This document shows, piece after piece, positions 39,398 through 61,866 of a stretch of DNA of 64,000 nt. The translations under genes were made by a program, and so were the position numbers. The stretch comes from Octopus bimaculoides. Taxonomy: Eukaryota. The stretch lies in assembly GCF_001194135.2 (NCBI RefSeq), contig NC_068991.1, forward strand, positions 72,448,039 to 72,512,038. Reading direction: 5' to 3'. Every line of letters starts with the position of its first letter. Within the stretch, counting starts at the first letter, position 1. The notes under the pieces were generated by a model. The model did not search any database, was not told where the DNA came from, and saw only the letters and a list, made by a program, of their open reading frames with translations.

Positions 39398-39642
39398 TTA
39401 ATCCTTTAGCACTTAAGCCGACTATATCCAGCCACAATATTCTACCTGTTTTATCCTCAGATCAGCCAGATATGGCCTTTTGAACCTACCCTACAATGTC
39501 ATTTTAAAAATATGCAATCACATCGTTGAAATCTTGGGGCTACAAGATAATTAATCATGCATTATAATGCATGATTAAGTCAAAACAATGTGAATAAATA
39601 AGCATTACTTTTGACAGAGTAATCCGAATGCTGAAGGGTTAA
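39398..39642 (-). mobile_element. piggyBac-like TTAA MITE, diverged copy
   Basis: TTAA|tcctttagcactt ... gaatgctgaaggg|TTAA. Confidence 0.8.
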
Positions 39643-39849
39643 TTCAGGAGGAAAAGTACCATAGCCATGTTAGAGCCTTTGATTCTTGGCTGAAGAAGTG
39701 ATACTTCAAACCACACCACTGGTATTCTTATTGCTGCCCTCAACAGTGTCCGTATTGAGTCTCATGGGCAGTCTTCTGACCTTTTCTATCCAAAGAGAGG
39801 GGTCTTTTCTTAATCGAATATTTACATGCTATTATTTATTACTTTACCA

Positions 39850-40075
39850 ATATGGTGAACTGGCAAAATTGTTGTGGCACCAGACAAAATCCTTAGCAGC
39901 ATTTCATCTGCTTCTTTATATTCTGAGTTCAAATACCACTGAGATTGACTTGACCCTTTTCATCCTTTAGGGGTCAATAAAATAAGTACCTGTTAAGCAC
40001 TGGGGGTGATGTAATCAACTTACTTCTCCCCTCAAAATTGTTGGCCTTGCGCCAAAACTAGAAAGAATTATTTTG
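39850..40075 (+). mobile_element. Family C SINE
   Basis: ctggcaaaattgtt, gagttcaaatacc, catcctttaggggtcaataaaataagtacc. Confidence 0.75.
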
Positions 40076-40274
40076 TAGCTTTATCTACTTCGAGTTTCAA
40101 TGTTTAAAAAAAAAAACCCAACAAATTATCTCAGATCTCTCGAAGCTTCTAAATTCTTCTAAATTCTGTATGTGTGTGTTTCTGTCTGTCTCTCTCTGTC
40201 TGTCTGTCTCTCTCTGTCTGTCTCTCTCCCTCTGTCTGTCTGTCTGTCTGTCTGTCTCTCATATATATATATAA

Positions 40275-40581
40275 ATTGTGCGTGAGAAGACCCGGCAAGC
40301 CAAGTGAGATCGTTGCCAGTGCCCCTGGACTGGCTCTTGTGCGGGTGGCACATAAGATGTACCATCTTGAGCGTGACCGTTGCCAGTACCGCCCGACTGG
40401 CCTCCGTAGGATTTTTGAGCGAGATTGTTGCCAGTGCCCCTGGACTGGCTCTTGTGCGGGTGGCACGTAAAAGACACCATTTCGAGCGTGGCCGTTTTCG
40501 TGCGGGTGACACGTAAAAGCACCCACTACACTCTCTGAGTGGTTGGCGTTAGGAAGGGCATCCAGCTGTAGAAACTCTGCC
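40275..40581 (+). mobile_element. Family A RTE-type 3' region with internal tandem subrepeats, cut by a gap
   Basis: gttgccagtgcccctggactggctcttgtgcgggtggcac occurs twice, then gtaaaagcacccactacactc. Confidence 0.8.
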
Positions 40582-41146
40582 NNNNNNNNNNNNNNNNNNN
40601 NNNNNNNNNNNNNNNNNNNNNNNNNNNNNNNNNNNNNNNNNNNNNNNNNNNNNNNNNNNNNNNNNNNNNNNNNNNNNNNNNNNNNNNNNNNNNNNNNNNN
40701 NNNNNNNNNNNNNNNNNNNNNNNNNNNNNNNNNNNNNNNNNNNNNNNNNNNNNNNNNNNNNNNNNNNNNNNNNNNNNNNNNNNNNNNNNNNNNNNNNNNN
40801 NNNNNNNNNNNNNNNNNNNNNNNNNNNNNNNNNNNNNNNNNNNNNNNNNNNNNNNNNNNNNNNNNNNNNNNNNNNNNNNNNNNNNNNNNNNNNNNNNNNN
40901 NNNNNNNNNNNNNNNNNNNNNNNNNNNNNNNNNNNNNNNNNNNNNNNNNNNNNNNNNNNNNNNNNNNNNNNNNNNNNNNNNNNNNNNNNNNNNNNNNNNN
41001 NNNNNNNNNNNNNNNNNNNNNNNNNNNNNNNNNNNNNNNNNNNNNNNNNNNNNNNNNNNNNNNNNNNNNNNNNNNNNNNNNNNNNNNNNNNNNNNNNNNN
41101 NNNNNNNNNNNNNNNNNNNNNNNNNNNNNNNNNNNNNNNNNNNNNN

Positions 41147-41455
41147 CTAAAAATGGCTTTAACCCCCACCCCCACCTCCATCTGCATCCAATCCACTCAA
41201 TGTAGGCTCAAAACTCACTCAAAACGGTATGTGTGTTTACAAAATGTGTGCTGCCATCTATTGGTAAACAATTGCTTACAGTATGTTTATATCGAGTGTG
41301 GCTGCAATAAATTTTTTATAAAGTTAGCATAAAGTTATACAGGTTAATGAAGGAATTAAAACTTTATCTTAGTGGTAATTTATTCTACAAAAGTATAGCC
41401 TAGGCTAGGGTGCATCCTATGCACTTGTGTGTCTTATAGGCCATCATATACGGTA
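41147..41455 (-). mobile_element. Family G pogo/Tc2-like MITE, inverted copy
   Basis: Ends gtgtcttataggccatcatatacggta; collinear reverse complement of 4110-4436. Confidence 0.8.
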
Positions 41456-42689
41456 ATTCAAAAGTTTTGCTGGAACATAGAATTATTATAGAAACAAATG
41501 TAATCATTATCAAGTAGAAATTGATACTTTATATTTCACTTTAGAGTTGAATAATCTCTCTAAATACTGCTACATCATGGAACCAAAGGCATTGGTATAG
41601 AAGCAAATAATATTTGGTTAACCATTTTTTTTTTTTCCCTAAGAAAGTCAGTGTTTTTAATTGGCACTTCAACAATATATCCAACTGTGTTTTTACTGCA
41701 AGCTGGAATTGAACTTGCATTTGTTTGTTTAAAGAATTAAGTGAACATTTGCATGACTTGGCTAATTCTTTGATTTGCTTTCTCTATTTGAAAATTAGCA
41801 TTATCTGAATGTAAGAAAATACTACTAAATATTTTTGGAAAATTTCTTTGAGAAAAACTAAGAACCTGCTTAGTGCATGAAGTCTTGACATCGAGAAGAA
41901 TTTGGTTGTGTTTGTGCAATCAAATTGCTTCCAAATTTCTTTTCTTTTTCCTCACTTTTTTCTATTTCCTTTTTATCTCTTTTTTTATTTATTTTACTCA
42001 TTTCAACTGGCATTCATATCTCTATCAGTATTCTACATGTATATATTTTTGCTTTGTTTTTGTAAAATTGAAAAAAACAAAAAGAAATGTATTCACATGA
42101 AAATAAGAAATAAGTTATTAAAAAATGAAACGGTGGTATCATTGTGATCGTTATTGTTGTCATCATCATTGTTGTTGTCGTCGTCGTCATCGTCATTTTG
42201 TCATGCATTTCTCTATGCTTGCATGGGTGGGATGGAACTCATTGAGGCAGATTTTCTATGACTGGATGCTCTTCCTCTCACCAACCGTCACTTGTTTCCA
42301 GCCAAGGTTATGTTTCCCCATAGCTGGACATGTTTTTATGAAACATTGGAAATGAATGACACAGCTTGTATGATGGTGACTCTCGTTTACAACTGTCATG
42401 TGATATCAAAACAAAGAGACACAAACACTCTCTCTCTCTCTGTCATACACACACATATACACACACACACATATCTATGTTCTGTAAAGCATTGAATAAC
42501 ATATCTGTTTTCTACTCATTATTATTGTTTCTATTATTTGGCTTGTATTCCCCACACTAGCCTATCCCATGGTTGATACCCTGCATTATACTACACTGGA
42601 TGCTGGGGTGGAGTATAGATCCCACAACTGTACCCTATCTTTGGTTATGTGCAATGCCTCACATTGCCCTTTTTGTGATATACGTATGT

Positions 42690-42793
42690 CATTGTTCAGT
42701 TTTGTTTCAAGATTCCTTGTCATTAGAGAAAGAGTTGGTTTCTAAACTAGATTCGAGGCTCCTTCATTGAAATTTCAACATCAACAACAGGGT
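42690..42793 (-). mobile_element. 3' UTR fragment of the R4/Dong-like retroelement, abutting (TATG)n
   Basis: Matches 56659-56750 (ttcaagatt..., agagaaaga..tggtttctaa.ctagat, ttcaacatca.caacagggt). Confidence 0.7.
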
Positions 42794-42873
42794 TATGTAT
42801 GTATGTATGTATGTATGTATGTATGTATGCATGTATGTATGTATGAATGTATGTATGTATGTATGAATGTATG

Positions 42874-43157
42874 TATCTTTTGCTGAACTGCTAAGTTACA
42901 GGGATGTAAACATGCCAACATCTGTTGTCAAGCGATGGTGGGGGGACAAGCACAGACACACAAACACACACACACACACACATATATTTGTACAAAGGGT
43001 TTCTTTCAGTTTCCATCTACCAAATCCGCTCACATGGCTTTGGTCGGCCCGAGGCTATAGTAGAAGACACTTGCCCAAGGTGCCATGCAGTGAGACTGAA
43101 CCCAGAACCATGTGGTTGGGAAACAAGCATCTTACCACACACCCACACCTGTGCCTG
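42874..43157 (-). mobile_element. Family B SINE
   Basis: gaggctatagtagaagacacttgcccaaggtgccatgcagtg. Confidence 0.8.
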
Positions 43158-43264
43158 CTTGTTCGTTCTTTCTTTCTACATGCACAGATATATATTTATA
43201 TATCTATATGTATACATACACACACACCTATATGCATTTATCTCTCTCTCTATTTCTCTCTCTC

Positions 43265-43334
<70 letters not shown>

Positions 43335-43399
43335 AGAATAAGGGCAGGGAATCGTCAATTAGTAATAGAATTAATAATTAACAATTTTGCCAAGTAGTT

Positions 43400-43606
43400 C
43401 ATTAATATCTTAACCGCGAAACGTTCATATCCAATTAACTAAAGGCAGGTTTGTTTTTGCTTTTCACTCTGGTTTTTTGTTCTATGTGTGCCATAAATAT
43501 CGCCATCCATTTAGAGAAAAATTTGTAGTTTAGAATCAGTAGTTCTTTGACTGCTATTTCTAAATTTTCAGTATGTTGGAGAAGCAACTCAATGCTAATC
43601 CCTGTA
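43400..43606 (-). mobile_element. Unclassified TA-associated repeat (family F)
   Basis: Reverse complement of 59420-59630; the terminus resembles the arm of the 1-160 fold-back (aggga..agca...gcttc.cca.catac...ttcagaaatagcag). Confidence 0.7.
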
Positions 43607-44120
43607 TATTTATATATATATGTATGTATGTATGTATGCTATGTAAGTATGTATATCTTTTTATTAGCTGTGAAGCTCATAACTGAATCAGAGTTCTAGA
43701 GTTTCACACTGAAATACACAGTAAACTTGTCTGAAGAGGATGATTCACTCTTTTGCTCTCAAACTTCATTGGTATCTGCAATCTTTCCCAAAAAAAGATG
43801 AATAACCAAATTTACATGCACACACACACACACACACATGCACTGGGTAGTATAGATATCCTTAGTCATGTGGCTAATGTGTCTGCTGATAAAAAAGTAG
43901 GAAAACAAATCTATTCGGCTATGATGTGTTATTTTAGAATTTAAGGGTTTTCTTTCGGCTTGTTACATCTAAGGGACAGCGTAACTGAGACAAGAATCAT
44001 CCGATGTAAATATAGCGTGTAATTCATCCTTTGTTCTGATGAATCTGAATTCTGTTGTCCTCAAGGTGAAGCATCTTGCAAGTTGTGAAGATTCTTTGAA
44101 ATATAAAATAAACATACATG

Positions 44121-44497
44121 CAGGCGTAAACATGGCTGTGTGGTAAGAAGCTTGCTTCACAACAACATGGTTCCGGGCTCAGTCCCACTGTGTGGCACCT
44201 TGGGCAAGTGTCTTCTACTATAGCCTCAGGCCGACCAAAGCCTTGTGAGTGGATTTGGTAGATGGAAACTGAAAGAAGCCCGTCGTATATATGTATATAT
44301 ATATATATATTTATGTGTGTGTATATGTTTGTGTGTCTATGTTTGTTCCCCCCACCATCGCTTGACAATAGATGTTGGTTGTGTTTACATCTCTGTAACT
44401 TAGCAGTTCAGCAAAAGAGCCCGATAGAATAAGTACTAGGCTTACAAAGAATAAGTCCTGGGGTCGATTTGTCCGACTAAAGGTGGTGCTCCAGCAT
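44121..44497 (+). mobile_element. Family B SINE, cut by a gap
   Basis: Collinear with 33643-34060. Confidence 0.85.
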
Positions 44498-45327
44498 NNN
44501 NNNNNNNNNNNNNNNNNNNNNNNNNNNNNNNNNNNNNNNNNNNNNNNNNNNNNNNNNNNNNNNNNNNNNNNNNNNNNNNNNNNNNNNNNNNNNNNNNNNN
44601 NNNNNNNNNNNNNNNNNNNNNNNNNNNNNNNNNNNNNNNNNNNNNNNNNNNNNNNNNNNNNNNNNNNNNNNNNNNNNNNNNNNNNNNNNNNNNNNNNNNN
44701 NNNNNNNNNNNNNNNNNNNNNNNNNNNNNNNNNNNNNNNNNNNNNNNNNNNNNNNNNNNNNNNNNNNNNNNNNNNNNNNNNNNNNNNNNNNNNNNNNNNN
44801 NNNNNNNNNNNNNNNNNNNNNNNNNNNNNNNNNNNNNNNNNNNNNNNNNNNNNNNNNNNNNNNNNNNNNNNNNNNNNNNNNNNNNNNNNNNNNNNNNNNN
44901 NNNNNNNNNNNNNNNNNNNNNNNNNNNNNNNNNNNNNNNNNNNNNNNNNNNNNNNNNNNNNNNNNNNNNNNNNNNNNNNNNNNNNNNNNNNNNNNNNNNN
45001 NNNNNNNNNNNNNNNNNNNNNNNNNNNNNNNNNNNNNNNNNNNNNNNNNNNNNNNNNNNNNNNNNNNNNNNNNNNNNNNNNNNNNNNNNNNNNNNNNNNN
45101 NNNNNNNNNNNNNNNNNNNNNNNNNNNNNNNNNNNNNNNNNNNNNNNNNNNNNNNNNNNNNNNNNNNNNNNNNNNNNNNNNNNNNNNNNNNNNNNNNNNN
45201 NNNNNNNNNNNNNNNNNNNNNNNNNNNNNNNNNNNNNNNNNNNNNNNNNNNNNNNNNNNNNNNNNNNNNNNNNNNNNNNNNNNNNNNNNNNNNNNNNNNN
45301 NNNNNNNNNNNNNNNNNNNNNNNNNNN

Positions 45328-45445
45328 TCCATGGGTTCCCTCAACTGTTAGGGTGTGGCACTTTTTCACGCAGCTATCCTCATCCATTCTCACCACATGT
45401 CCATACCAGCGCAATCGTCTCTCTTGCACACCACAACTGATGCTT
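45328..45445 (-). mobile_element. RTE-clade LINE ORF2 C-terminal fragment
   Basis: Translates as SISCGVQERRLRWYGHVVRMDEDSCVKKCHTLTVEGTHG; RRLRWYGHV.RM is a typical RTE C-terminal motif. Confidence 0.85.
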
Positions 45446-45456
45446 ATATATATACA

Positions 45457-45496
<40 letters not shown>

Positions 45497-46171
45497 TATA
45501 AATACACATACACACATATGTGCAGAATGGTTATTTGCGCTGCATACAAAAAAATTTATTCTTTATATGTTCTGGCAGATTCAAAAGCAAAGTATGCTAG
45601 TTGTTGTTGTATAAATCACAGGAGAACACACTGTCATTGAAACAGGGAGAATTTGTCCTCTTGTGACCAACACAACAACCACTAGCATATTTTGTGTCTA
45701 AATCTGCTGCAACGTATTAAGATTGAATATGCAAATCATCATTATATGTGTACATGAGTATATAGTCATATATATGTGTACACACACAATCACACACTCA
45801 TACACCCCCCACACACAGATAAACACACACACACTCACACACACATAATTCAGTTGAATTCATTTTATGTTTTCTCTTTATGCTGCTGATATTTTTCTTT
45901 ATGTGTGTAGCAGTGATTGTTTCCATAGAAACAATGTCAAACCGGTTCATTTACTTTCATTTCATTCTTTGGTATTCCATTTCCTGCTTATACTATATCA
46001 GTTTGTTTTGTATACGTTATTCAGTCATATCAAATTCTATCGTTTATCACCACTCTAAATATTATATTTTTTCCCCATTTTTTGTGCGTGATATCATTCA
46101 CTATTTTAACATTTGAGATCACGCAAGCATCATACTATAAATAACCTACTATCTTTAAAAATATTTCACTA

Positions 46172-46334
46172 TAGGTGCATGCGTGGCTGTGTGGTAAAAA
46201 TCTTGCTTCGCAACCACATGGTTTTGGGTTCAGTCCCACTATGTGGCACCTTGGGCAAGTGTCTTCTACTATAACTTAGGGCTAACCAAAGCCTTGTAAG
46301 TGGATTTGGCAGACGGAAACTGAAAGAAGCCTGT

Positions 46335-46336
<2 letters not shown>
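46172..46336 (+). mobile_element. Family B SINE 5' half, ending at its internal (TA)n
   Basis: gtggctgtgtggtaaaa...gtggcaccttgggcaagtgtcttctactata. Confidence 0.8.
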
Positions 46337-46370
<34 letters not shown>

Positions 46371-46529
46371 CAAAATTTAAAGCAAACAGAAAATGGAGAA
46401 ATATTGATGAACAACAATTGTCTTACATCAATTATTATTTATTAATTCAATACAAATAAACTGCATCCCATAACTTCCTGTCTTCTCACCAGTTTTTGAG
46501 GCTCTGAAAAATTTTAAGGGTCATGGATG

Positions 46530-46660
46530 CAACCCTTCCTTTGCTGAATAAGTGGTAAAAGGGAAGACAGAAAGGATCTTGTTCATGAGATGAGGTGCTG
46601 CATCATGATGGTGAAATGTGGAAGTTGAATATGGAAGACGTGCAGAGGCTAGAGAGAAAT
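46530..46660 (+). mobile_element. Degenerate RTE ORF2 remnant
   Basis: 46595-46660 reads VLHHDGEMWKLNMEDVQRLERN, resembling the RTE 'LHGSETW...RRLE' motif. Confidence 0.55.
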
Positions 46661-49600
46661 GTGTCAAATATATGTTACTTGCTTAAGCTCTTTGCTCCAT
46701 ATGGAATATAGGCCATTGAGGACTTTTCTCCACTGTTCACTGTTATGGGCTGTTGTTAAGTCCCAAGTCTTGTTGGTTTTGAATTGTCATCAGTGCTTCT
46801 AAAACTTTGATTTTTCTAGGTAGAGGTGCTGACTGTATGCAAGAGGTGTTCCATATTAGTCTGGCCTCTCTCCTTTGACTTGTCCAGCATGTATATCTGT
46901 GTGTGTATGTGTGTGTGTGTGTGAGTGAACAAATAAATAGAAGCAGTATTTAAAACATATATTTGGAATTGTATTTATTGAATGATACATTGACTTAGCT
47001 CCTCCCATTATTTAACGTTCCGTGAAACCATTAATGTCAAATGCCTGATGAAACAGATACATGGAATAAAGGCATACTCATGATCTGTAAATATACTATG
47101 AATAATATTTAACAATATCCTATGGCTGTGTGGATATAGTTGCATTTAACAGAATAAGCTGAATGCTAAAGGGTTAAGCGGAATCTTAATGACACCAATC
47201 TCACCAGTCTGAGAAGCCCTACAGAGGTCACGTGCACTGTCTCTTTCTCCAAATGCAGCAAGTTAAGAAAAAAGACAACAACAACAACAAACAAACACCT
47301 GCCAAGGATTTAGTAAAAACCAAACAATTATGGGATTACTATGGAAAAGAGTATATAAGTTATTATCATGAAATCTGATATTTGCCAAGGGGCTTCTTAT
47401 TGTATATTGGTAATTACACCGAGGTGTTAACAAAGGAAACACAGGTTTGTTCCTCAAAAGGCACTTTTTATTGACTTTTGCATTGTCATTGTATGAAAGT
47501 GCAAAGATACTTGGTTTTAAAAATATAATATTATATATGCCATGTTTCCAAATGAATCCTAGATTCATATATCATTGACAGGAAATAGAATATAATTTCA
47601 ATTACAATCACAAGAATTTTGGGAAATGTTGATTAGAATCTGTCCAATCATGTGTGAAATATACATTCAGATATCTTGAGTTTAGATGTTTGGGTTAGGA
47701 AGGAGGAGGAAGAGGAGGAGGAATAGTGTAGTAGATTTGTTATCTTTCATATGATAGTCTTTCTTAATAGCAAGCTGCCTGATGTAAAAGCATCTGGGTT
47801 TTTTTTTTTTTTTTTTTTACCTGTTTAGAAAGTATTCAATTTTCAAATTAAACATTTTACCATGATTTCCTTTGAGTACTTTTTGTTAAGTTAATGTTTC
47901 AAATATTTAACCCTTTTATTACCTTATATCTGTAGATCATTATCAACGCCTCCATCACCACCATTACCTCCTGTGTGTGTGTGTGTGTGTATATGCACAT
48001 GTTTGTAAGTGTTTACAGTTTGTGCTTACATGCATGAAAAATTGCCGAGTTATGAACTGTTATTCTCTGTTGTCCCTTTCCCTGTCACCCTGCTTAGTAT
48101 GAAAACTCCTGTGCTTAAGAGCAGGTAAGGATTGGTGATAGGAAGGCCATCTGGCTGTAAAAACAATGCCTCAACAATGTGTATTCATCTAACTCATACT
48201 AGCATGGTAAAACAGACATACAAAAATCTCTAATCGATGAAGAGTTCTTATAAGCATAATTATTTTATTTGTCTTAACTTCTAATTAGTTTTTATCAAAT
48301 AATGACTTATAGTATCAATATGATTGATTGAAAAGAATAATGAATTTCTATTAGATTATTGTTGTAGTTTGACTCCAGGTCTTCCCTGATTAAGCAGACC
48401 AGCGATCAATGACTCTCTAGCCATGACCATCTTGTCTTGTTTGAGGTAGACTGTACTTCAGACTACATTATCCAATATGTGTTTTTTTTTTTGAATGTCA
48501 GTAGTGTTTTGTTTTAGGGAGAGTCGGTTGCTATTTCTAGCAGACAAAGTGGTGATGTAGAATTTCCGTTTGGCTCAGGTTGTATTAGGTTTTTGAATAT
48601 GACATGAAGGAGATGAAGGTTAAATTTCATTATAGAATGTGTATAACAGTCTATCACAGCTAATGTTCCTATATATACATATTGTTGATGAACCAGGGAG
48701 TGTAGAATAAAGTGCCCTGATCAGAAAGCAGATGGCTTTGATTTACAAACTATAGGCTTGTTAGTCAAATTAGTGCCTTCTCGATTAAGCTATTTCACTT
48801 TTACAGTTTATATATGCAATAATTTACACACACAAAAAAAAATATATACATGCTCATAAACATTCATACTGTTTCACATGCATGTTATGAATTTATATCA
48901 TTTTCAAGATTATTTATTATTTGGAAAACTTTCTAATTTAATTTATTCTTAATTAAACTTTTTCTTCATTTTACTTTCTTATTTAAAAAAAAAAAATTAT
49001 TAATTAAATTTTTTTCTTTATTTCTTTTATACTTTTTTTTATATGCCATCATCTTCATTTTGCTATCTGCTTAATCAGATTTTTCCTTAATTGTCACCAA
49101 ATTATCGAACCCAGTTTAATCTTTGGAATAAAATATATTATTTTTCCATTGAAAGCTAGATTCTTTTTCATAAAAATTAGTCAGAAAATGCAATGTTTAT
49201 AACAGTAATTCTCCTCTATTAATAATTATTATTCTTTATCTCTCTGAAATACACATTTGAAATTTCATATATTTAAACATTTAATAGTTACTCACGATTT
49301 GAAATGAAAAAAATATCTTCTGACCCAAAGTAATCCATGAGATTAAAATTAAAAAAATAGATTAAACATTTATTCTATATAGCTGGAGTTTAAGATTGGT
49401 AACTTTGGAAATGCTCCAGGACTGTTTCTTCTTTATTAAAAAAAAAAACCCCAAAACAACGAATAAATCTTTCATAATTACATGAAAACATAGGAGTTGC
49501 CTAAAAATTGTTTTCTTTTATTTGCTCACATGAAAGATATCATGAAACAAACTGTTTTTCTTCTTCTTATTCAACACAAACTTAATCTTACGTTCATTCA

Positions 49601-49957
49601 TTAGTACTGACTGTTTTGAAAAATGTATCTTTTTTTTAAAATTTATTTTTAATTAGGCAATTAAATAAGATATGAATAAGAAATACACAGGAAAGTGACT
49701 AACAATCGTAAATAAAGAATACAGAATATACATCCATTTAAATAAGACAAAATATCTTTAAATATTTGGACGAGGAGAATAAATATATTTTCATTTAGAT
49801 TCCCATATTGTGGTATTTTCAAGCTCATGCTGTCATATAAATGCGAAAAAAAAAAAGAGAAAGAATAATATTTAAAAAAAAAAATCAATGCAAAATATTT
49901 TATTTACTTGTTGGAAATTTTTGTTACATGGGTAAGTCATATTTTTCTCCCATTTAG

Positions 49958-50008
49958 ACTGCAGATAAATCGTAGATCACAATTACTGTCTGCGATTGGG
50001 GTGACAAG
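49958..50008 (+). CDS. Candidate cassette exon (51 nt, phase 2-2), (A)LQINRRSQLLSAIGVT(x), in the kinase-UBA linker
   Basis: atttttctcccatttag acceptor and consensus AAG|gtaagt donor; length divisible by 3; open only in phase 2; ACTAAC at 50076-50081. Confidence 0.6.
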
Positions 50009-50539
50009 GTAAGTTGCATATTGCTTATCAACTCGGTGTGATATTCTCTTTTGTGTGAACTTGTCATTTCTGTGGACTAACAATTCACTTGCCATTTGAA
50101 TTGCCATTCTCAGAACTGATACAGTTCATACTTAGAACTCAAATCATATAAGCTCGCATTCGGTATCAACAAAGAGTGTTTTAATTTTAGTGCTAAAAAT
50201 AGAACTGAATTATGATTTAAAAAAAAAAAAAAAAAAAAAAGCAGGTAAAAATTCAGCTAATAAGGTGGATGTGAACGATCCTCGAAATTTTGAGCCATTT
50301 ACATTTGTGGTAATAATTATTATTTCGTAAATTGTTAATTTCCAAAATTTGTGCTTTGTTAAGCACAGAACAATTTGATTTGTTATTCAGTAAACCAGCA
50401 TGTAATCAAGGCTACTGTTTTTGGGTCAATATTCTGTTTGTATGCCTTGCTTAGCCTATAACACCACATTGATACAGCAGAACAAATACATACAGATGTG
50501 TACATATATATATGTATATATACATATGTGTGTGTGTGC

Positions 50540-50589
<50 letters not shown>

Positions 50590-52128
50590 GCATAAGCATA
50601 TACATATGTATAAGTGTATGCATGTATATGTACATATTATATGAATATCTGACTGCGAAAATATATACTATTATTATACTGAGATATCTGCTAGATATAT
50701 AAATACACTTTCACACAATGGAAAGACTAATTTCATAAATTTCATATACACTGATGTGTATATTATATATATATATATTTATGATAGATATATCAACACA
50801 CATACACACATACATACATACACACACACACACATACATACATACATACATACACCCATACATACAACACATACATACACACACAAATACATACATACAC
50901 ACAAATAAATACATTCATACTTACATACATACATGCGTACATGCATTCACGCATCTACTTTCCTTCACTCTCTTGTAATCTCTTTAACACTCACATATTG
51001 TAAAAGGGTTTTCAAGAAATTAATGTCTAGAAGAAATACGAAAATTCTAGGAATATTTCATTAAAGCTGTTAATAACCTCCACAAAGAAATCAAAAACGG
51101 TTTTTCTTCAAATGCTAAGTTCTTTGGCCTTAAGCTAGTTCCCTCCTTACATAGTCATTGCTTATTTTGTAATCATTCAGCTACATTACATATGCATTAC
51201 ACTTTACATTATATGTGAACTCAACGAAGCATATTTTATATTACAAAGATTTTTGAGACTAACCTGCCTGAGACAGCTCAGGTTCTATCATATAAATTCC
51301 TTACAGATGTTTTACAGCAATCTACAGTAAAACCTTCCATCAAAATTTCATGTTAATTTATGTTCTAAACACTAAGCTCGATAATGACAAAATTATTTTG
51401 CTAAGTTCTGCATCATTTTCAAAATTAATTGAAACACAGGTAGTGTATTTCAACAGAAATATGGTAATGAAAGGCTTAAAGAATGGTAATTTGCCCATAA
51501 GTGAAAATTCTTGCATAAACACAGAAACCATGTTTGTTTGGTATAAAATGGTTCATCGTTATTTAAATTAAAAAAAATTTTTTTTTGTAATTCATTATTA
51601 AGCAGTCTTTAGAACTTCTTTGCATTCTAATATTTGTTTAGAATTCAGAGAAATTCTAAAACCTTGTTTCTAAATCAGTAAGATATTATTATTATTATTA
51701 TTATTATTTATTTATTTTTTTTTGAAGCATAGAAACAGGATTGCTGTTAACAAACTGAAAAATTGTGTTGGAGACATCATCCTGCATAAAATGTTTTAAT
51801 TTATTTCTTTTAATGTGGGATTCATTTAAAACAAACAAACAAATCATTCATTTTAAAAGATTGAGTGTTTTATGTTGTAGCATTTTAAGGAAGACACACT
51901 GGGTGGGGGGAGGGGTTCCACATTGCTTTCCTTAGGCAGCCAGAGAATCTACAATTAGGAGAAAGATTAAATGGAATTTATAAAATTCATAAAATAGCTT
52001 CAACTGACATTAAAAACCAGGTTGTGAACAACTAACCAGGAACTTGCTTTCTACTTTCCAATATTTATCTAAACTCGAATAAGATGAAGAATATTTAAAA
52101 AAAAAATTACTGCTTTTCCATTTCTCAT

Positions 52129-52170
52129 TGAGGTAATCATTCTTTTGTCTGAGGTAATCATTCTTTTGTC
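52129..52170. repeat. Perfect 21-bp tandem duplication
   Basis: tgaggtaatcattcttttgtc twice. Confidence 0.9.
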
Positions 52171-54389
52171 AAGTCCAAAGTATTAGATTGCTTTATTTTA
52201 ATTATTTTTCCTTCACTGCAATTGTCTTTCCGGTTGATTTAGTTGTCCAGTATCGATATCTATGTCACTTCTGTCTTCTGTACTTCTTCATGTCCATTAC
52301 CTTTGATAGAAATCTACCATTATTGAGAGAAAAATATTCTTCAGTTAATATGCGGAATATAATATATAGTTTCTTGTTTGAAGTGAAATCAATTACATGT
52401 GAACTCTAATTTTATTTTATTCTGTGTTCATCATGTTATCCTCTTCTCAGTTTGTTCTCCTCTGTGACTCTCTCCTCATGTATCATTGAACAATGCTTCT
52501 AATGACACATTCCTAAAGGGTTGATTATGTAAGGCCCATTTAATTTGTGTTGTTGTTTAGCCCCAAGTCAGCTTGAGTCAAAAGGTATTCCATCCAGAAC
52601 CACCTTCTCTTTTGGTGGATATCTCAGAATAAATGATCTAAGATATCCTTCCCTTTTTTCAAGTTTGTTGGGTGTAATTTGAGAGAGATTTGACTGCAAT
52701 TTCTTGTAGGCTGAATGACTGTGCAGAAGTTTTCCTCTTTCTCAAAAGCAATCTTTCTACTAAATCTAAATGCTTATTTAAGGGTCCACATCTTGTATTC
52801 AAAGTAGAAATTCACTTTTGTCATGACAATGGCTTTGCAGTATTTTTCATCTCATTTTACATGAATAATTTTTTATTTACCTAATTTGCAAGACTTAATT
52901 AAAACAATAATAGTATATTGGAATTCTCCGCGACACATTTTAAATGTTTGTTAGTTTTATTTATATTTTGCACGTATAATATTTTATAAACAATTCCCGA
53001 TTGCATTGTCAATTTCAAGATAGAAATCTCTGCTTAGATTTTTTTTATTTAATAACTTAGTCAGAGAAGGTAGAGCAGCACTCTCAACCATTTCCAGAGC
53101 AATGGATGAGGTGGGGATGCTGTTCTTAGACCACAGATTTGTTCTGAGTGGTTGCAACGGAGCACATCCTGGGGAAGAAACCAAAGGGTAAACTAAGTAA
53201 TGGATTAAGTTAATCTTCAGAGAATAGGACTGCCCCCTCCACCCTCTGACAAGCTTCTACACTGTTGCCTTCTATTAAAATTTTTCTTTAAAAACTTTGC
53301 AACTATGGTAGAAAACTACTTCACAAGGTGGGTGTTGCACAACTTGAAACCACAAAGCAGATTTCTTAAATGTTGATATGTTATGAAATACCTTAATTGA
53401 AAGATAAATATTCAAAGACAAATATTTTTATATTGGATTTCAAAGAAATGCTGATTCCTTTTTTGGGATGATTTCTTTGATTTCATAATTTGTGACAAGT
53501 TGATTTCTTTAGGTACTTATGTTAACCTTTACTCAAATCCAACATTAATTTCTTGATAACCTAACACTTACATATGTGTATGTGTTTATAAAACACGCAT
53601 ACACTCACAGACAAGTCTCATGATTGGCATAGATTTAAATGTAACAAAACAAATTGACAGATTTGTCATTGGTTGATAAAATGAGCAAACTCAAGCATGT
53701 TGCTCAATTTTTTATCAGTTTTCATTAACCTAAACAAGCTATTGATCAACGAGATAAAGACCCTACAAGAAATTAAAAATAAACTTTGTAAGACATAAAT
53801 TATAACAACAGAAACATGTTTGTACTAAATTTATTAAAAATAAATCTTAAGATATCATCTAAGCTGTTAGTAACATATTCAAACATATAATCGCCAGAAG
53901 CCAATCACACTTGTAACATTTATTAGAGGCTCAACAGATTAAACAAAGCAGATTTTGGAATGTTGTTCAATGTATTCCATAAATCCAGAAATATCAGTGG
54001 TACACTAAGTTGAATATTTTTTTTATTTAAACATATATAGCATAAAGGTTTAAATCTAAATATGTAAATGTGTCTATAGTTAAATGAAGTTGAATTTTTC
54101 ATTTAAATATATGTAAATAAGCTGCAATCAACACCCCCTTCCTAAACAAGCATATGACACTACTAAAGTAGTTGACCTGAAGACAATTAGTCTGTAAGAC
54201 ATGTCTAGGTAGATGTATATGACCACATCTGGTCATGTAATAATTAATATTGCATATGGTTTAGCACTTCTACTCATGTAAATATATTTCATTAACTCAT
54301 TTAGACTATTCATGAGATGTCTTAGCTGACAGATAATTTTTTTGTTAATAGTGTTGAACCTTCTAGTAATCTCTGAAATCATTTTGAAA

Positions 54390-54436
<47 letters not shown>

Positions 54437-55853
54437 CTATGACGTGGCGATTTAACAATCTGTTCAGTTATATCATTTCACATTTTCAATTATTTTTATT
54501 CAGTATCAAAACGATAGTTGGTTCTGTTATCACATTGAATCTTTACATGCTCCATGAGTTTTGACGTGCACAATTAAGCGATATCATTGCTATGCCTAAT
54601 TCAAGCCTTTACACATTCTCCATTTTTGCCCTTTAATAATAATAATAATAAAAACTTGATTAAACAAATATAAATAACTTTAAACGGTTATTCATCAGAT
54701 TTTGTAAAAAAAAGGAATGAAATAAAACAAATTGCTTAAAAATATTGGTTTCAAATTTTGGCACAAGGCCGGCAAAATTGCTTAAACATACGATTCAATG
54801 TGGTAATAGCCAGCTTGAGAGAACAAAATCCTTTTTAAATGTTAGCAGACAGGATCTCAATGGCACTGTTGTGCAATATTTATATGTAAAACACATTTTT
54901 CAAACTGAAATAGTTCTTTCTCAAGTTTGCTTGTTATCAACATTGATAACATTTGAAAAGAAATTTAATATGATAAATTAATTTGTAAACTTATCAACAC
55001 AAATCCTTTTTATATATAAAATACTAATGTCTTCATTTTTAAGCTAGGAGGTTCTACACAAAAAATACAAATAGAACTTGGCTCGTAGTACAAGTAGTGT
55101 TTTTTTTTTTCTTCTGAAATATCTAAACTATCTTGAAATATACTTTTAAGTATACTTCTAAATTCTTAGAAGCAAAAATCTTAGAAGGAAGTCAATGTAT
55201 AATATTTTTTTTGTAAAAATAATACTTTGAGATTTCACCCTCAGTCGGACATATTTGTCCACATCCACAAAATAAAATGCCTCATGTCACTCTGTAAAGT
55301 AAATTTCGACTTTGCATGCTGCAATTTCAAAGCAGTAAGTGTGCTTGTGCCGCATGTTAATATATTTGTTAAAACATACGCGCTTTGATTTTTTTTTTTT
55401 TTTTCGTTGTTTGAGCACCTAAAAAGTGTTTACTGCTGTGATGTTTTCATCTAAACATCCATCTTGTCTGACCTTGACGAGAAAAACATTTGAAAAAAAA
55501 AAAAAAAAAAGTTAAAAAAATAGCAATTACGTTTGCATCCTTTGCTTGCAAAAAAATTAAAAGAAAGTTTCAAAAAAAAAAAAAGAAGATATTGACCAAC
55601 AAGAAATTTAGCTTGCTTAGTATTCTGCCTGGCAAGCAAATCGTAGCTTAATTGTAGCCTCAGATAGCCAAATGGGATACCATTTTGGTTCTGTTTTATA
55701 GCTGCATTCAACTTTAAGAAATTATGTTCTGTAAAAATTGTCTTTGGTAGTTTGATAGTTGAAACTGCAGTCCAACTATCTCTCTTCTCTTTCCTGTTTA
55801 TGTTAAGCTTTCTTTCTTGTCACATTTCCTTTCTTATCACAGGTTATCTGAAG

Positions 55854-55918
<65 letters not shown>

Positions 55919-56132
55919 ACATGCCAAACCCTACTGAATACAAGACTGCATTATATGTCAATGTCTTTGAGCACACACAAACACACGCACATACAAACAC
56001 ACACATACACATCTCTGTGTGTCTACATATGTATGTATATGCATGTGTGAGTATTTATATTTAAGTATATATGTCTGTATGTATAGGTATCATATACATA
56101 CACATGCACCTATACATATAGACAGACATATA

Positions 56133-56220
<88 letters not shown>

Positions 56221-56246
56221 TAATTTATGTGTGCGTGTGTGTGTGT

Positions 56247-56283
<37 letters not shown>

Positions 56284-56658
56284 TAAAATATGAGTGTTTC
56301 TGTGTATGATATGTCGATATGTGTATAAGTGTCTAGTGGGTGCTGTGGAACAGGAGATAATTTCTTGGTAAATCAGGTTTACAACCTAATTTCAATGTCC
56401 AGTTGAAGACATTACATTTCATTTTGTATCCCTAAAACCTTTCAGAAGCTCATAAATGCAACAAATCCCAGACGCCTCTAATCACAATTAGCCTCACACA
56501 TAAACAGAAAATGCAAAAAGTAAATCGCTTCATCCACAGTGTATTGTGACACTGTTGTATCTAGTTAAATTTGGAAATGGGTACGCTACATTCAACATGT
56601 ATGTATGCAGCATGAATGTATGTATGTATGTATGTATGTATGTATGTATGTATGTATG

Positions 56659-57120
56659 CCATTATTCAGTTTATTTCAAGATTTCTTGCCAATAGAGAAA
56701 GAACTGGTTTCTAACCTAGATCCATTGGAATTTCAACATCAGCAACAGGGTATTTTTGTTTGTTTGTTTCTATGTATGTATATGTGCAGATTTGTATGTT
56801 TTGCTTTATGTATGTATTCTCATGCATATAGTTGCCTATCTAGACATGCGCATATATATACTTAAATGATAAACTTCTGGAAAGTTTTACAGATTTTTAC
56901 ATTTCCAGTGATGGACTGGATTTGTAGTCTTCGAATTAGCTTTCTCCTTTCTGGTTTTGAGAAGACTAATTTCTCAAGATTGGTATTTAGGCAATGTGTT
57001 ACATATCCCAGTACCCCATTGATTACTGGTATAAACCTGAACTTGCAATCTGTATAGAGTAACTGCAGATTTCTCAATAGTTCAGCATAGGTGTTCTCTT
57101 TTTCACTGATCTTCAGCTTT
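56659..57120 (-). mobile_element. 5'-truncated restriction-like-endonuclease (R4/Dong-type) non-LTR retrotransposon within (TATG)n
   Basis: Minus-strand peptide KISEKENTYAELLRNLQLLYTDCKFRFIPVINGVLGYVTHCLNTNLEKLVFSKPERRKLIRRLQIQSITGNVKICKTFQKFII* resembles RLE-domain C-termini (K..Y..L...IP.+.G.LG...LQ...+.G...I); flanked by (TATG)n/(ATGC)n on both sides. Confidence 0.7.
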
Positions 57121-57504
57121 ATGTATGTATGTATGTATGTATGCATGAGCATGTATGTATGCATGCATGTATGTATGCATGTATGTATATATGTATGTAT
57201 GTGTGTATGTATGTATGCATGCATGCATGTATGTATGCATGCATGCATGCATGAATGTATGTATGCACCCATCCTCATAATCATTACCATCATTTTAATG
57301 TCAACTTCCCCATGCATGTATGGACTGGCCAGAGTTTATTGAAACAGATTTTCTATGGATGGATGCTCTTCCTGTTACTAACCTTCATGAGATCTTACTC
57401 CATAGCCAGATATACAAGAGATGAACGACACTCATTTACAAATATCACATGATATCAAGCCATAGAGACACACAGACACATACACACATATGCACCTAGA
57501 ACGT

Positions 57505-57695
57505 TCCCCTTCAAGGCAAAAGTGTGAGCAAGGTTGTTTCATGGAAGACTAGTAGTTGTCCATGCATACTAGCCTCCCCTCTTCATGCTACCGATGTTAT
57601 CCAAATGAAAGGCCAAGACAGACACAGCTTGGCACCAGTGATGTCGCAACTCATTCCTACAGCTGAGTGAACTGGAGCAACATAAAATTAAGCAT
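57505..57695 (-). mobile_element. Family H SINE body
   Basis: ggaagactagtagttgtccatgcatactagcctcccctc...gcttggcaccagtgatgtcgcaactc matches 6045-6336. Confidence 0.7.
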
Positions 57696-59419
57696 CTAAT
57701 ATATATATACATAGAAAATAAAGGAAATCTCGAATGCAGGATAAATTGGAAAGTAGCTTAGAAGATCAGGTAAATATGCTTAGAAGAACCCTGTACCTCT
57801 CAGATTCCAGTTGAGCACTCATTAAGTTAAGTAATATCTGACAACAAATGCTATATTCTATAATGCGAAATAATAGCTTTTGGAATTTGAGACCATTTTT
57901 TATAAACAAACTTAGAAGTGCTGAGTGAGTTGGTATTTTACAGAGACAGATAGAAATCTTGAACACATGATAGCTGTGAAAACGGTTTAGAAGATTGGGT
58001 AAATTCTCTTACAAATAAGGAGTTATTTAAAGCTTGGGTATACACCTGGTAGTATGCCAATTAAAGCACTTTCATTGTCTATGGCTACCTGTTGTCGTCA
58101 TCCACGGTAATGATATAAATGCCACTGGATCTACCTCAGGAATTCCTCAGTTTTTGTCAAGAATATAAAGAATGAGAGAAACAGAAACTAGAATTCACAA
58201 GAGTCTTTATTAATCACAGTGATTTTCTTGACCCCTCTTGCATCGATCTCTCACAGGGGTGATAATACGCAACTGGTTGTGGTGCATCCTTCAGAGCAAA
58301 TGTGTCTCATCAGGTGACTTGTCAAAAGTACCCTGAGCTTATTGAACAAGGAACCTTTTGATGATAAAGGTGATGATGATGATTATGATGTAATACTAAG
58401 ATCAAAGAACTGAATATCCTTAGGCATTGCCACACAATAAAAATAATGCCCTCTTTTCCCTTTCTCCATCTCTAAAGCCAAATAGTTTTTCTTGTAAGAT
58501 AAGTGTGGTTAAAAACTTTGCCTTCTAATCATGTGGTTTCAGGTTCAGTCCTACAGTATGGCACTTTGGGCATATGTAGTTTACATTAGCCAAGGCCAGT
58601 CAATGGAGCATGAGTGAATTTGGTAAATGTGTCTGTGTCTGTGTGTGCATGTGTATATGTGTGTATCTGTATCTATCTATAAAGATAGATCTATTTAAAT
58701 ATACATACTGTAGAATGCGAAATTCATTTATCTGAACAGCAAGTAAGGGTTGGTGACAGGGAGAGCATCTGGCTTTAAAATCATTCATCATCCTAAAATG
58801 CATCTCCATCCAACCCATACTAACATAGAAAAAACAGATGTTAAACAAAAATAAATGAACAGACGGACATGTGCATGAACAAAATGTCTTCAGAAAAAAA
58901 GAAAAAAAACTACTGGAAATAGCTTCACAATAAGTGCAAGCATAAAAAAAATAGTATCCCAATTGTTTCCATATTCCATTCTCTGTAGCTGAGAACAGCA
59001 TGTATCCTTATTGCAATATTTAAAAATATTACCATGTGTGACTCTCAATTTGTATTTCCCCCCTCACTTGGAAGCTTTCTATCTCTCTCACCCTCTTTCT
59101 TTCTCCCTCTCTCACTTTCTTTTTGTCTCTTCCTCCTTATTTTTCTCTCTCTGCCTCTATGTTCCCTTCAATTTCATCCATCTTGTCGTTGTCTCTCTCT
59201 TACTGTTTGTCTCTCTGCAGCATTCATATCCTGGTGAAAAACTCAGAAAATTCCAGCCAAGATAGCATCCTTCTTTGATTAGGTTTATTTTCTCCCATCA
59301 TTGTCAAATATTTTGCATAGTAATTGCATTAACTTTTCAAACCATTCAGACTTGTTGATTTGTGTTGATATAGCAATGTGTAAGTCTGTATATATATATA
59401 TATATATATATAATCATAA

Positions 59420-59630
59420 ATATACAGGGATTAGCAGAAGCCTGCTTCTCCAACATACTGAGAATTCAGAAATAGCAGTCAAAGAACTTCTGATTCCAAA
59501 CTACAAATTTTTTCTCTAACGGATGGCGATATCTATGGCACACACAGAACAAAAAACAGAAGAGAAGAGTAAAAACAAACCTGCCTTTAGTTAATTGGGT
59601 ACGACGTTTCACAGTTAAGGGTATGAATTC
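59420..59630 (+). mobile_element. Family F repeat, second copy
   Basis: tatacagggattagcag...aacctgcctttagttaattgg; matches 43400-43606 inverted. Confidence 0.7.
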
Positions 59631-59675
59631 CCCTATTCCGATCTTCAGCCACAATATTCGAATAAATTTGCCAAT

Positions 59676-59767
59676 GTCTAAATAACTCACGTTAATTTTG
59701 ACCATGTAGTGTCTGCCTCACGTGGTCTTGATGTCGCATGGTCAAAATTAACGTGAGTTATTTAGAC
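59676..59767. repeat. Perfect 31-bp inverted repeat with a 30-nt spacer, abutting an N-gap
   Basis: gtctaaataactcacgttaattttgaccatg / catggtcaaaattaacgtgagttatttagac. Confidence 0.9.
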
Positions 59768-60509
59768 NNNNNNNNNNNNNNNNNNNNNNNNNNNNNNNNN
59801 NNNNNNNNNNNNNNNNNNNNNNNNNNNNNNNNNNNNNNNNNNNNNNNNNNNNNNNNNNNNNNNNNNNNNNNNNNNNNNNNNNNNNNNNNNNNNNNNNNNN
59901 NNNNNNNNNNNNNNNNNNNNNNNNNNNNNNNNNNNNNNNNNNNNNNNNNNNNNNNNNNNNNNNNNNNNNNNNNNNNNNNNNNNNNNNNNNNNNNNNNNNN
60001 NNNNNNNNNNNNNNNNNNNNNNNNNNNNNNNNNNNNNNNNNNNNNNNNNNNNNNNNNNNNNNNNNNNNNNNNNNNNNNNNNNNNNNNNNNNNNNNNNNNN
60101 NNNNNNNNNNNNNNNNNNNNNNNTATATATATATATATATATATACATGGTAATTTTCAATGCTGGCTCAGAACTCAATAGAAAATACATAGAGATAAAC
60201 TTAAAAATGAAAACAATCCACTGCCATCACAAAAGCTAAGAACAATGTTGATTTGTAAACCTTTAATATACTCGGCAGTATATTTTGGTTGCAAATGAAA
60301 TACAGTGTCCCTTGCTACACTCAAACACAACCACACACATATATACATATATACGACAAGCTTCGTTTAGTTTCCATCTACCAAATTCCCCCAAGAGTTT
60401 GCTTAGCCTGAGGCTATAGTAGACACCCAAGGTGTCATGCAGAAGTACTGAACTTGGAACTCTGTGGTTTGGAATGTGCTGCTTCTAATGCAAAATTTGA
60501 ATCTGTGTA

Positions 60510-60569
<60 letters not shown>

Positions 60570-60924
60570 NNNNNNNNNNNNNNNNNNNNNNNNNNNNNNN
60601 NNNNNNNNNNNNNNNNNNNNNNNNNNNNNNNNNNNNNNNNNNNNNNNNNNNNNNNNNNNNNNNNNNNNNNNNNNNNNNNNNNNNNNNNNNNNNNNNNNNN
60701 NNNNNNNNNNNNNNNNNNNNNNNNNNNNNNNNNNNNNNNNNNNNNNNNNNNNNNNNNNNNNNNNNNNNNNNNNNNNNNNNNNNNNNNNNNNNNNNNNNNN
60801 NNNNNNNNNNNNNNNNNNNNNNNNNNNNNNNNNNNNNNNNNNNNNNNNNNNNNNNNNNNNNNNNNNNNNNNNNNNNNNNNNNNNNNNNNNNNNNNNNNNN
60901 NNNNNNNNNNNNNNNNNNNNNNNN

Positions 60925-60979
<55 letters not shown>

Positions 60980-61099
60980 TGCATACACACACACACACAC
61001 ACACACATATATCAAATAATTTGTTAAAGAAAGGCATCAAAAACATTGAGTGCAGGAAGATTTCAAGGTTAAGATAATTGGCCTTCTTCATTCTGTACT

Positions 61100-61495: not shown

Positions 61496-61866
61496 TATTA
61501 TGTCAAATGGTGTTGTGTATTCTCTAGGGTTAAATATTACTTAACTATGTGTCTAAAGTTATTAATATTACCTTTGCTACTGGTGATAATGTTCTTTATT
61601 ATCAATATGGCTTCTGTCTGAGTAGTAACATAGAAAATACTGACTAATAATTGTGAAAAAATACTTCCTTTTTCGTGATAATTTACTACACACTCAATAA
61701 GTTTTGTATCTAGGTGAAGCAGTGGTCAAGAATCTTTAAATTATTCTATTTCGGCATAAGATTATTCATGATAATTCATTTGCTGAAACTGGTTTGTACA
61801 TCTCATGCCGTTTGGCTTTTTGGCTTGTTCAGGTATCTGGAAAAAAAAAAAGTCTGTGTGTGTGTG

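What the first reader, a model, noticed from the sequence alone, without database searches (positions are those of the whole stretch)
49958..50008. Second symmetric phase-2 cassette exon candidate (51 nt) about 17 kb downstream in the same intron
Seen: pyrimidine-rich acceptor, consensus AAG|gtaagt donor, 51 nt, only phase 2 open (LQINRRSQLLSAIGVT), ACTAAC at +68, and non-repetitive flanks. Like the 45-nt candidate it contains an RR dipeptide, here followed by Ser. Inference: together the two exons could give four linker isoforms, or a mutually exclusive pair, between the kinase and UBA domains, i.e. a possible cephalopod-specific splicing module in a neuronal polarity kinase.
Basis: partly seen in the sequence, partly recalled or inferred. 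Interest (0 to 1): 0.75.

Follow-up and report, generated by a model that had tools for sequence, protein, structure and literature searches.

The report
Real alternative mini-exon in octopus BRSK kinase
The 51-base segment is a genuine alternative exon of the octopus brain kinase BRSK/SAD.

Summary
Window 49958-50008 is ag|51 nt|gtaagt, open only in the frame that reads LQINRRSQLLSAIGVT, with ACTAAC at +68 and no repeat in the flanks.

The host gene is the octopus BRSK/SAD kinase. The host intron starts at 25555, after a 35-nt exon (…HRHPWVT+GC). It is phase 2, so the exon is in frame.

The decisive evidence is in public protein models. They carry exactly this peptide at exactly this junction:
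- Octopus bimaculoides isoform X3, O. sinensis X3 and O. vulgaris X1 read …HPWVTA-LQINRRSQLLSAIGVT-R-DVQGQ….
- Nine other models also carry the 45-nt sibling exon (33267-33311, WNIVGSKYHRRNLA) in tandem.
- One model has the 45-nt exon alone, and several have neither.

The mutually exclusive alternative is refuted.

The insert lies between Pfam Pkinase (ends at residue 265) and UBA_BRSK (starts at 327). That is the flexible linker in front of the autoinhibitory UBA domain.

No insert appears in the one Argonauta, cuttlefish, squid-like, bivalve, gastropod, chiton, annelid or brachiopod sequences retrieved. As annotated, the module looks Octopus-specific rather than cephalopod-wide.

Function, tissue pattern and DNA-level conservation could not be tested here. 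The exon is real but already annotated, so interest is modest.

The parts
3841..3874 (+). BRSK exon, 34 nt, encodes (G)SPHYACPEVIR in the kinase domain
   Evidence: tblastn against human BRSK2. Boundaries cacag|GTCTCC…ATTCGG|gtaaga. The splice simulation reproduces the P0240 sequence.
21056..21124 (+). BRSK exon, 69 nt, encodes [23 protein letters not shown]
   Evidence: Boundaries ttcag|GGAGAA…CTTGTG|gttagt.
23113..23259 (+). BRSK exon, 147 nt, encodes GALPFDDD…EVDPEKRLT, followed by a phase-0 intron
   Evidence: Genomic read-through fragments from many animals show the same phase-0 intron position after this residue.
25520..25554 (+). BRSK mini-exon, 35 nt, encodes LEEIHRHPWVT plus GC. It marks the end of the kinase domain and sets phase 2 for the next intron.
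   Evidence: tblastn hit LEEIHRHPWVTA. Sequence tatag|TTAGAAG…ACAGC|gtgagt. Splice simulation.
25555..64000 (+). Phase-2 intron of at least 38.4 kb that runs off the window and hosts both cassette exons
   Evidence: tblastn finds no downstream BRSK exon (DVQGQIELELP…) in the window. Gene ranges in relatives are 173-229 kb.
33267..33311 (+). 45-nt cassette exon, encodes WNIVGSKYHRRNLA and shares a split Ala codon upstream and a split Arg codon downstream
   Evidence: Sequence ttctag|GTGGAAT…CGCAAG|gtaaat. The exact peptide is present in P0240, P0350 and other models. TGC lies 14 nt upstream of the exon.
49937..49957 (+). Pyrimidine-rich tract and AG acceptor of the 51-nt exon
   Evidence: The nearest upstream AG is at -23.
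49958..50008 (+). 51-nt cassette exon (the finding). It turns the junction …VTA|DVQ… into …VTA-LQINRRSQLLSAIGVT-R-DVQ…
   Evidence: Sequence. Splice simulation. The exact peptide sits at the exact junction in O. bimaculoides X3 (P0351), O. sinensis X3 (P0358), O. vulgaris X1 (P0250) and nine models that carry both exons.
50009..50016 (+). Consensus donor AAG|gtaagttg
   Evidence: Its matrix score of 7.9 bits places it among the top 2 of 2061 GT sites in the intron.
50076..50081 (+). ACTAAC branch-point-like hexamer at +68. A pyrimidine-rich stretch and a CAG follow at 50111-50113.
   Evidence: The role is untested and no model seen uses that acceptor.

Best explanation
Window 49958-50008 is a true frame-preserving cassette exon of the octopus BRSK/SAD kinase gene. 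It is 51 nt long and sits between phase-2 introns.

It lies in a long intron (at least 38 kb) between two exons: the mini-exon that ends the kinase domain (…HRHPWVT) and the exon that begins the linker and UBA region (DVQGQIELELP…). A second cassette exon of 45 nt lies 16.6 kb upstream in the same intron. Each exon can be included or skipped on its own, which gives four isoforms.

The isoforms differ only in the flexible kinase-UBA linker. Relative to the skipped form, the linker grows by 15 residues (45-nt exon), 17 residues (51-nt exon) or 32 residues (both).

**Shown here**
- The exon boundaries, phase and reading frame.
- Identity with annotated isoforms in three Octopus species.
- The position of the inserts between the two domains.

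**Inferred**
- In mouse SAD-A the UBA domain, together with the autoinhibitory sequence (AIS), docks on the kinase domain and holds helix αC out. A longer, more basic tether probably changes how readily the UBA domain and AIS dock. That would shift basal activity or activation.
- The insert may instead, or also, add a regulatory site. The 51-nt exon brings an R-R-S motif, which is a candidate site for a basophilic kinase.
- Inclusion is probably regulated by tissue, and I expect it to be neural.
For: - **Frame.** Simulated splicing of the window exons gives …HPWVTA-LQINRRSQLLSAIGVT plus AG, in frame.
- **Match to models.** Identical peptides sit at the identical junction in XP_052827888.1 (O. 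bimaculoides X3), XP_036362964.1 (O. sinensis X3), CAI9729816.1 (O. vulgaris) and nine models with both exons. Models with the 45-nt exon only and with neither also exist.
- **Domain position.** Pfam places the inserts (residues 268-299 of P0240) between Pkinase 14-265 and UBA_BRSK 327-369.
- **Splice signals.** Perfect donor, good acceptor, correct phase, no stop codon.
- **Conservation.** The peptide is identical between species that diverged 13-34 million years ago (PMC10925132).
- **Structural context.** In SAD-A a flexible linker joins the kinase domain to a UBA domain that cooperates with the AIS in autoinhibition (PMC4686854).
Against: - I could inspect no RNA reads or inclusion levels. 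Support for expression rests on the existence of evidence-based RefSeq isoforms. That these are built from transcript alignments is my general knowledge of the NCBI pipeline, not something tested here.
- DNA-level conservation against the flanking intron could not be measured, because orthologous gene ranges were too long to fetch.
- Linker point mutations in mouse SAD-A had little effect on basal activity, so a change in length may matter little.
- The AlphaFold model was poor (mean pLDDT 47, insert below 50) and says nothing useful.
- The inserts have no detectable relatives outside Octopus.
Confidence: 0.85

Rival explanations
1. Low-level splicing noise. A deep-intronic pseudo-exon with strong splice sites is occasionally included and was picked up by annotation pipelines, but the isoforms have no function.
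For: - I had no inclusion levels.
- The peptide has no homologues outside Octopus, and none appear in decapodiform transcripts or cuttlefish models.
- The insert region gave no confident structure.
- The O. vulgaris model may be partly projected from O. sinensis.
Against: - Two separate exons both keep the frame in the correct phase without stops.
- Both peptides (30 residues plus two junction Arg) are identical in O. bimaculoides and in O. sinensis/vulgaris, which diverged 13-34 million years ago.
- Models with both exons are the majority of the annotated isoforms.
Confidence: 0.12
2. Chance pseudo-exon that is never spliced. AG…GT pairs with an open frame are common in AT-rich introns.
For: - With looser matrix thresholds, several symmetric open pseudo-exons appear on both strands.
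- A 51-nt stretch is open in a given frame about 30% of the time at this base composition. I derived this estimate from the composition reported.
Against: The peptide and the junction match annotated isoforms of three species exactly.
Confidence: 0.02
3. The two exons are a mutually exclusive pair.
For: Models carrying a single exon exist (P0350, P0351, P0358, P0250).
Against: Nine models carry both exons in tandem, and others carry neither. The two exons share no sequence similarity that would suggest duplication.
Confidence: 0.01

Closest known systems
RefSeq isoforms of Octopus BRSK2/SAD-1-like: XP_052827888.1 (O. bimaculoides X3), XP_036362964.1 (O. sinensis X3), XP_036362966.1 (O. sinensis X5), CAI9729816.1 (O. 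vulgaris)
   Same: They carry the identical peptide LQINRRSQLLSAIGVT at the identical junction. The exon boundaries implied by the flanking Ala and Arg codons are also the same.
   Different: Nothing differs at this exon. The window is simply the genomic locus of these models. Which Octopus species the window comes from was not determined.
Mammalian and C. elegans SAD/BRSK splice isoforms (long and short forms that differ at the C-terminus; from my own knowledge)
   Same: The same kinase family is diversified by alternative splicing in neurons.
   Different: The known isoforms differ downstream of the UBA and KA1 regions, not in the kinase-UBA linker. None of the vertebrate, arthropod or nematode sequences I retrieved and read has an insert at this junction.
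Neuronal microexon programme (SRRM/eMIC-dependent; PMC8797185)
   Same: These are short, frame-preserving cassette exons in a neuronal gene that alter a surface or linker region. The 45-nt sibling has a UGC 14 nt upstream of its 3' splice site.
   Different: - At 51 nt the exon is at or above the usual size limit.
- It has no UGC near its 3' splice site; the nearest is at -69.
- The AG-free zone upstream is only 23 nt.
- The donor is very strong, not weak.
- Neural specificity was not tested.
Insert at the same junction in the nemertean Lineus longissimus BRSK2-like X2 (P0393)
   Same: An extra stretch of about 17 residues lies between …HPWVLG and …DVELELP, the same linker site.
   Different: The sequence is unrelated (WRTNQPVPFSSNLFHSDTRS), so it is presumably of independent origin.

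Membership tests
Frame-preserving cassette exon | Canonical AG acceptor and GT donor at the stated boundaries | tested here: met
   tttag|ACTGCA … GACAAG|gtaagt.
Frame-preserving cassette exon | Length divisible by 3 and no stop codon in the phase of the host intron | tested here: met
   The exon is 51 nt. The host intron is phase 2 because the 35-nt exon 25520-25554 leaves GC. The frame-2 reading is open.
Frame-preserving cassette exon | Both inclusion and skipping isoforms exist | tested here: met
   Annotated protein isoforms with and without the peptide exist in O. bimaculoides, O. sinensis and O. vulgaris. This is evidence from annotation, not from reads.
Frame-preserving cassette exon | Junction-spanning RNA reads and measurable inclusion level | not testable with these tools
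   No RNA-seq data or search over eukaryotic transcript DNA was available.
BRSK/SAD kinase (AMPK-related) | Domain order Pkinase, then UBA_BRSK, then KA1_BRSK | tested here: met
   Pfam on P0240 gives Pkinase 14-265, UBA_BRSK 327-369 and KA1_BRSK 535-643. The window exons translate to the P0240 sequence from SPHYACPEV through HPWVTA, plus both inserts.
SRRM/eMIC-dependent neuronal microexon | UGC motif close upstream of the 3' splice site, a long AG-free zone and weak splice sites | tested here: not met
   For the 51-nt exon the nearest TGC is at -69, the nearest upstream AG is at -23, and the donor is a perfect consensus. The 45-nt sibling does have TGC at -14.
SRRM/eMIC-dependent neuronal microexon | Neuron-specific inclusion that depends on the eMIC domain | not testable with these tools
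   No expression data were available.
Recursive-splicing exon or ratchet site | A 5' splice site (GTRAGT) is regenerated at the start of the exon after the first splicing step | tested here: not met
   The exon starts with ACTGCA.
Poison (NMD-inducing) exon | A premature stop codon or frameshift in the host frame | tested here: not met
   The exon is open and symmetric in phase 2.
Transposon-derived (exonised) exon | The exon overlaps a repeated element | tested here: inconclusive
   No in-window repeat overlaps 49458-50508 apart from poly-A runs. Genome-wide repeat libraries were not available.

The most novel reading that the evidence does not exclude
The two mini-exons are an Octopus-lineage innovation. 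Neurons use them to set the length and charge of the kinase-UBA tether of SAD kinase. This would tune UBA/AIS autoinhibition or add a site for a basophilic kinase (NRRSQ), giving a lineage-specific regulatory input into a conserved kinase of neuronal polarity and synapse organisation.
Probability: 0.2. Interest if true: 0.55.

Novelty: already known. Interest (0 to 1): 0.3.

Why it matters
It shows that a tool-free reading of raw sequence correctly picked two real alternative exons out of a 38-kb AT-rich intron.

Biologically, SAD/BRSK kinases control neuronal polarity and presynaptic organisation, and they are autoinhibited through the UBA domain. A combinatorial insert directly in front of that domain, apparently limited to Octopus, is a plausible but untested example of lineage-specific tuning of a conserved neuronal kinase.

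The exon is already in RefSeq. What remains open is its regulation, how old it is among cephalopods, and what it does biochemically. No paper describing it turned up in two searches of the library.

Tried and rejected
1. **Wrong-phase concern.** I first placed the candidate in the intron after 23259, which is phase 0. There frame 1 reads TADKS* and the exon would have been a poison exon. tblastn with invertebrate sequences then revealed the 35-nt exon 25520-25554, which makes the host intron phase 2. The concern was dropped.
2. **Chance pseudo-exon.** The matrix statistics are only suggestive. The isoform matches settle the question.
3. **Other exon types.** A recursive-splice exon, a poison exon and a mutually exclusive pair were all rejected (see the membership test and rival explanations).
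4. **Intronic non-coding RNA.** Rfam finds nothing at the exon, and the sub-threshold miRNA hits at 50486-50950 are microsatellite. The RNA fold z-score is 0.15.
5. **Repeat or transposon origin.** There are no in-window copies.
6. **Short protein query.** An 83-residue query returned only fragments of 146 residues or fewer and no octopus protein. A query built from tandem copies of the octopus-specific segment, with and without the inserts, was needed to reach the full-length models.
7. **Orthologous DNA.** The cuttlefish products are not on record. The antisense ORF over the exon is not on record either.
8. **AlphaFold2.** The model of the isoform with both exons, built on a 36-sequence alignment, had mean pLDDT 47. 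It is too poor to interpret.
9. **Cluster listing.** A second listing returned the same 15 members, so 6 cluster members remain unseen.

Full report
**Observation**

A pyrimidine-rich tract and an AG (49937-49957) precede the exon. The exon is 51 nt: ACTGCAGATAAATCGTAGATCACAATTACTGTCTGCGATTGGGGTGACAAG. A consensus donor, AAG|gtaagt, follows. Frames 1 and 3 contain stops, and frame 2 reads LQINRRSQLLSAIGVT. ACTAAC lies at 50076-50081, which is +68. Within ±500 nt the only in-window repeats are poly-A runs. Nothing at the exon matches an Rfam family. The region folds no better than shuffled sequence (z = 0.15).

**Gene context**

The window is AT-rich with assembly gaps and carries exons of a BRSK/SAD kinase on the plus strand. 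tblastn with human BRSK2, written from memory, found three exons:
- 3841-3874, encoding SPHYACPEVIR.
- 21056-21124, encoding GEKYDGRK…ALLV.
- 23113-23259, encoding GALPFDDD…EKRLT.

The intron after 23259 is phase 0. Genomic read-through fragments from many animals show the same intron position. tblastn with invertebrate sequences then revealed a 35-nt mini-exon at 25520-25554, tatag|TTAGAAGAAATTCATCGGCATCCATGGGTAACAGC|gtgagt, encoding LEEIHRHPWVT plus GC.

The host intron therefore starts at 25555 and is phase 2. It runs past the end of the window, so it is at least 38.4 kb long, and no downstream BRSK exon was found. In this phase the candidate is open and symmetric. The same holds for the 45-nt sibling at 33267-33311. 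Simulated splicing gives …HPWVTA-[WNIVGSKYHRRNLA-R]-[LQINRRSQLLSAIGVT] plus AG.

**Is it more than chance?**

I scored splice sites with a rough human-like position weight matrix.
- The donor is among the top 2 of 2061 GT sites in the intron.
- The acceptor ranks about 56th of 1824 AG sites.
- At the candidate's own thresholds, two symmetric pairs open in phase 2 exist in the intron: the candidate itself and a 27-nt one at 48098-48124. There are none on the entire minus strand.
- From these densities, and a chance of about 0.3 that 16 codons stay open at this composition, I estimate roughly 0.05 such pairs per intron.

This is suggestive only. The gene's real exons score lower than the candidate, so signal strength alone could not decide.

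**Decisive evidence**

An 83-residue query returned only short fragments. The tool appears to favour proteins of about the query's length. I therefore built a 571-residue query from tandem copies of the octopus-specific segment, with and without the two hypothetical inserts. That query retrieved two key models:
- XP_036362966.1, Octopus sinensis BRSK2-like isoform X5 (P0240). It reads …LEEIHRHPWVTA-WNIVGSKYHRRNLA-R-LQINRRSQLLSAIGVT-R-DVQGQIELELP….
- CAI9729816.1, O. vulgaris (P0250). It reads …HPWVTA-LQINRRSQLLSAIGVT-R-DVQGQ….

Listing the cluster, and one further search, showed every combination:

| Exons included | Models |
|---|---|
| Both | O. sinensis X1, X2, X4-X7; O. bimaculoides X4, X6, X7 |
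| 45-nt only | O. bimaculoides X5 |
| 51-nt only | O. bimaculoides X3; O. sinensis X3; O. vulgaris X1 |
| Neither | O. sinensis X8; O. bimaculoides X9, X10; O. vulgaris X2; Argonauta hians |

The mutually exclusive alternative is excluded.

**Taxonomic spread**

A search with P0240 found no insert at this junction in any of the following:
- Four cuttlefish (Acanthosepion pharaonis) models.
- Twelve decapodiform-like transcript ORFs from Logan assemblies.
- Bivalves, gastropods and a chiton.
- An annelid and a brachiopod.

The nemertean Lineus longissimus has an unrelated insert of about 17 residues at the same site. As annotated, the module is Octopus-specific rather than cephalopod-wide. Minor isoforms may be missing from other annotations.

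O. bimaculoides and O. sinensis diverged 13-34 million years ago (PMC10925132). Identity of both peptides over that time is consistent with constraint, but it is not proof. I could not fetch orthologous DNA to compare the exon with its flanks.

**Mechanism**

Pfam places Pkinase at 14-265 and UBA_BRSK at 327-369 of P0240. The inserts occupy residues 268-299, at the start of the kinase-UBA linker.

In mouse SAD-A a flexible linker connects the kinase domain to a UBA domain. That domain binds the face opposite the catalytic cleft. Together with the autoinhibitory sequence (AIS), it holds helix αC out (PMC4686854).

My inference is that the exons lengthen this tether by 15, 17 or 32 residues and add basic residues. 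The effect would be to modulate UBA/AIS docking or to add a regulatory site. The 51-nt exon brings R-R-S, a candidate site for a basophilic kinase. A contested PKA site, Thr260, lies just upstream in mammalian BRSK2 (cited in PMC4436836).

Two results weigh against a large effect or leave it open:
- Linker point mutations had little effect in SAD-A.
- The AlphaFold model was too poor to use, with mean pLDDT 47.

The 51-nt exon also lacks the UGC and weak-site signature of eMIC-dependent microexons, whereas the 45-nt exon has a UGC at -14.

**Verdict**

The feature is a real alternative exon that RefSeq already annotates. No paper describing it turned up. Interest is modest. The open questions are regulation, age and biochemical effect.

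Noticed in passing
Outside the window (next exon of the gene); proteins P0376/P0388 (Ostrea edulis) and P0379/P0390 (Biomphalaria glabrata): In other molluscs the exon after this intron comes in two alternative versions that look mutually exclusive: D.QG.(V/I)ELELPV.QVVQTS versus G(T/S)KQD…ELP(V/M)MQIVQTS. The octopus models I saw use only the first type, and no second copy was found in the window.
   Followed up: partly
window 48098-48124 (+): A 27-nt pseudo-exon-like segment, cttag|TATGAAAACTCCTGTGCTTAAGAGCAG|gtaagg, is also symmetric and open in phase 2. Its splice-site scores are at least as good as the candidate's. It is not present in any isoform retrieved.
   Followed up: partly
window 50076-50113 (+): The ACTAAC at +68 is followed about 33 nt later by ttctcag. 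This could define a 105-nt mini-intron right after the 51-nt exon. Reading on from that acceptor meets a stop after 7 codons, and no model uses it.
   Followed up: no
window 33636-33811, 44113-44290, 37571-37739, 46183-46341 (+); 8604-8759, 42991-43141, 14065-14215 (-): A SINE-like repeat family of about 170 nt, 83-93% identical between copies, is scattered through the introns. One copy lies about 330 nt downstream of the 45-nt exon.
   Followed up: partly
window 33253-33255 (+): The 45-nt sibling exon has a TGC 14 nt upstream of its first base, the position typical of SRRM/eMIC-dependent microexons. The 51-nt exon has none nearer than -69.
   Followed up: partly
Protein P0393 (Lineus longissimus BRSK2-like X2): An unrelated insert of about 17 residues sits at the same kinase-UBA junction in a nemertean. 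This phase-2 intron may have gained alternative exons more than once.
   Followed up: no
window 50486-50950: Sub-threshold Rfam hits to mir-297, mir-466 and mir-3149 fall on (TA/CA)n microsatellite and are artefacts. Blocks of N (assembly gaps) occur throughout the window.
   Followed up: yes
Proteins P0001, P0002 and P0127: The best short hits to the octopus kinase segment are nematode SAD-1-like fragments. In P0002 an in-frame extra segment of about 15-16 residues is read through at HPW|V, which looks like a retained small intron.
   Followed up: partly
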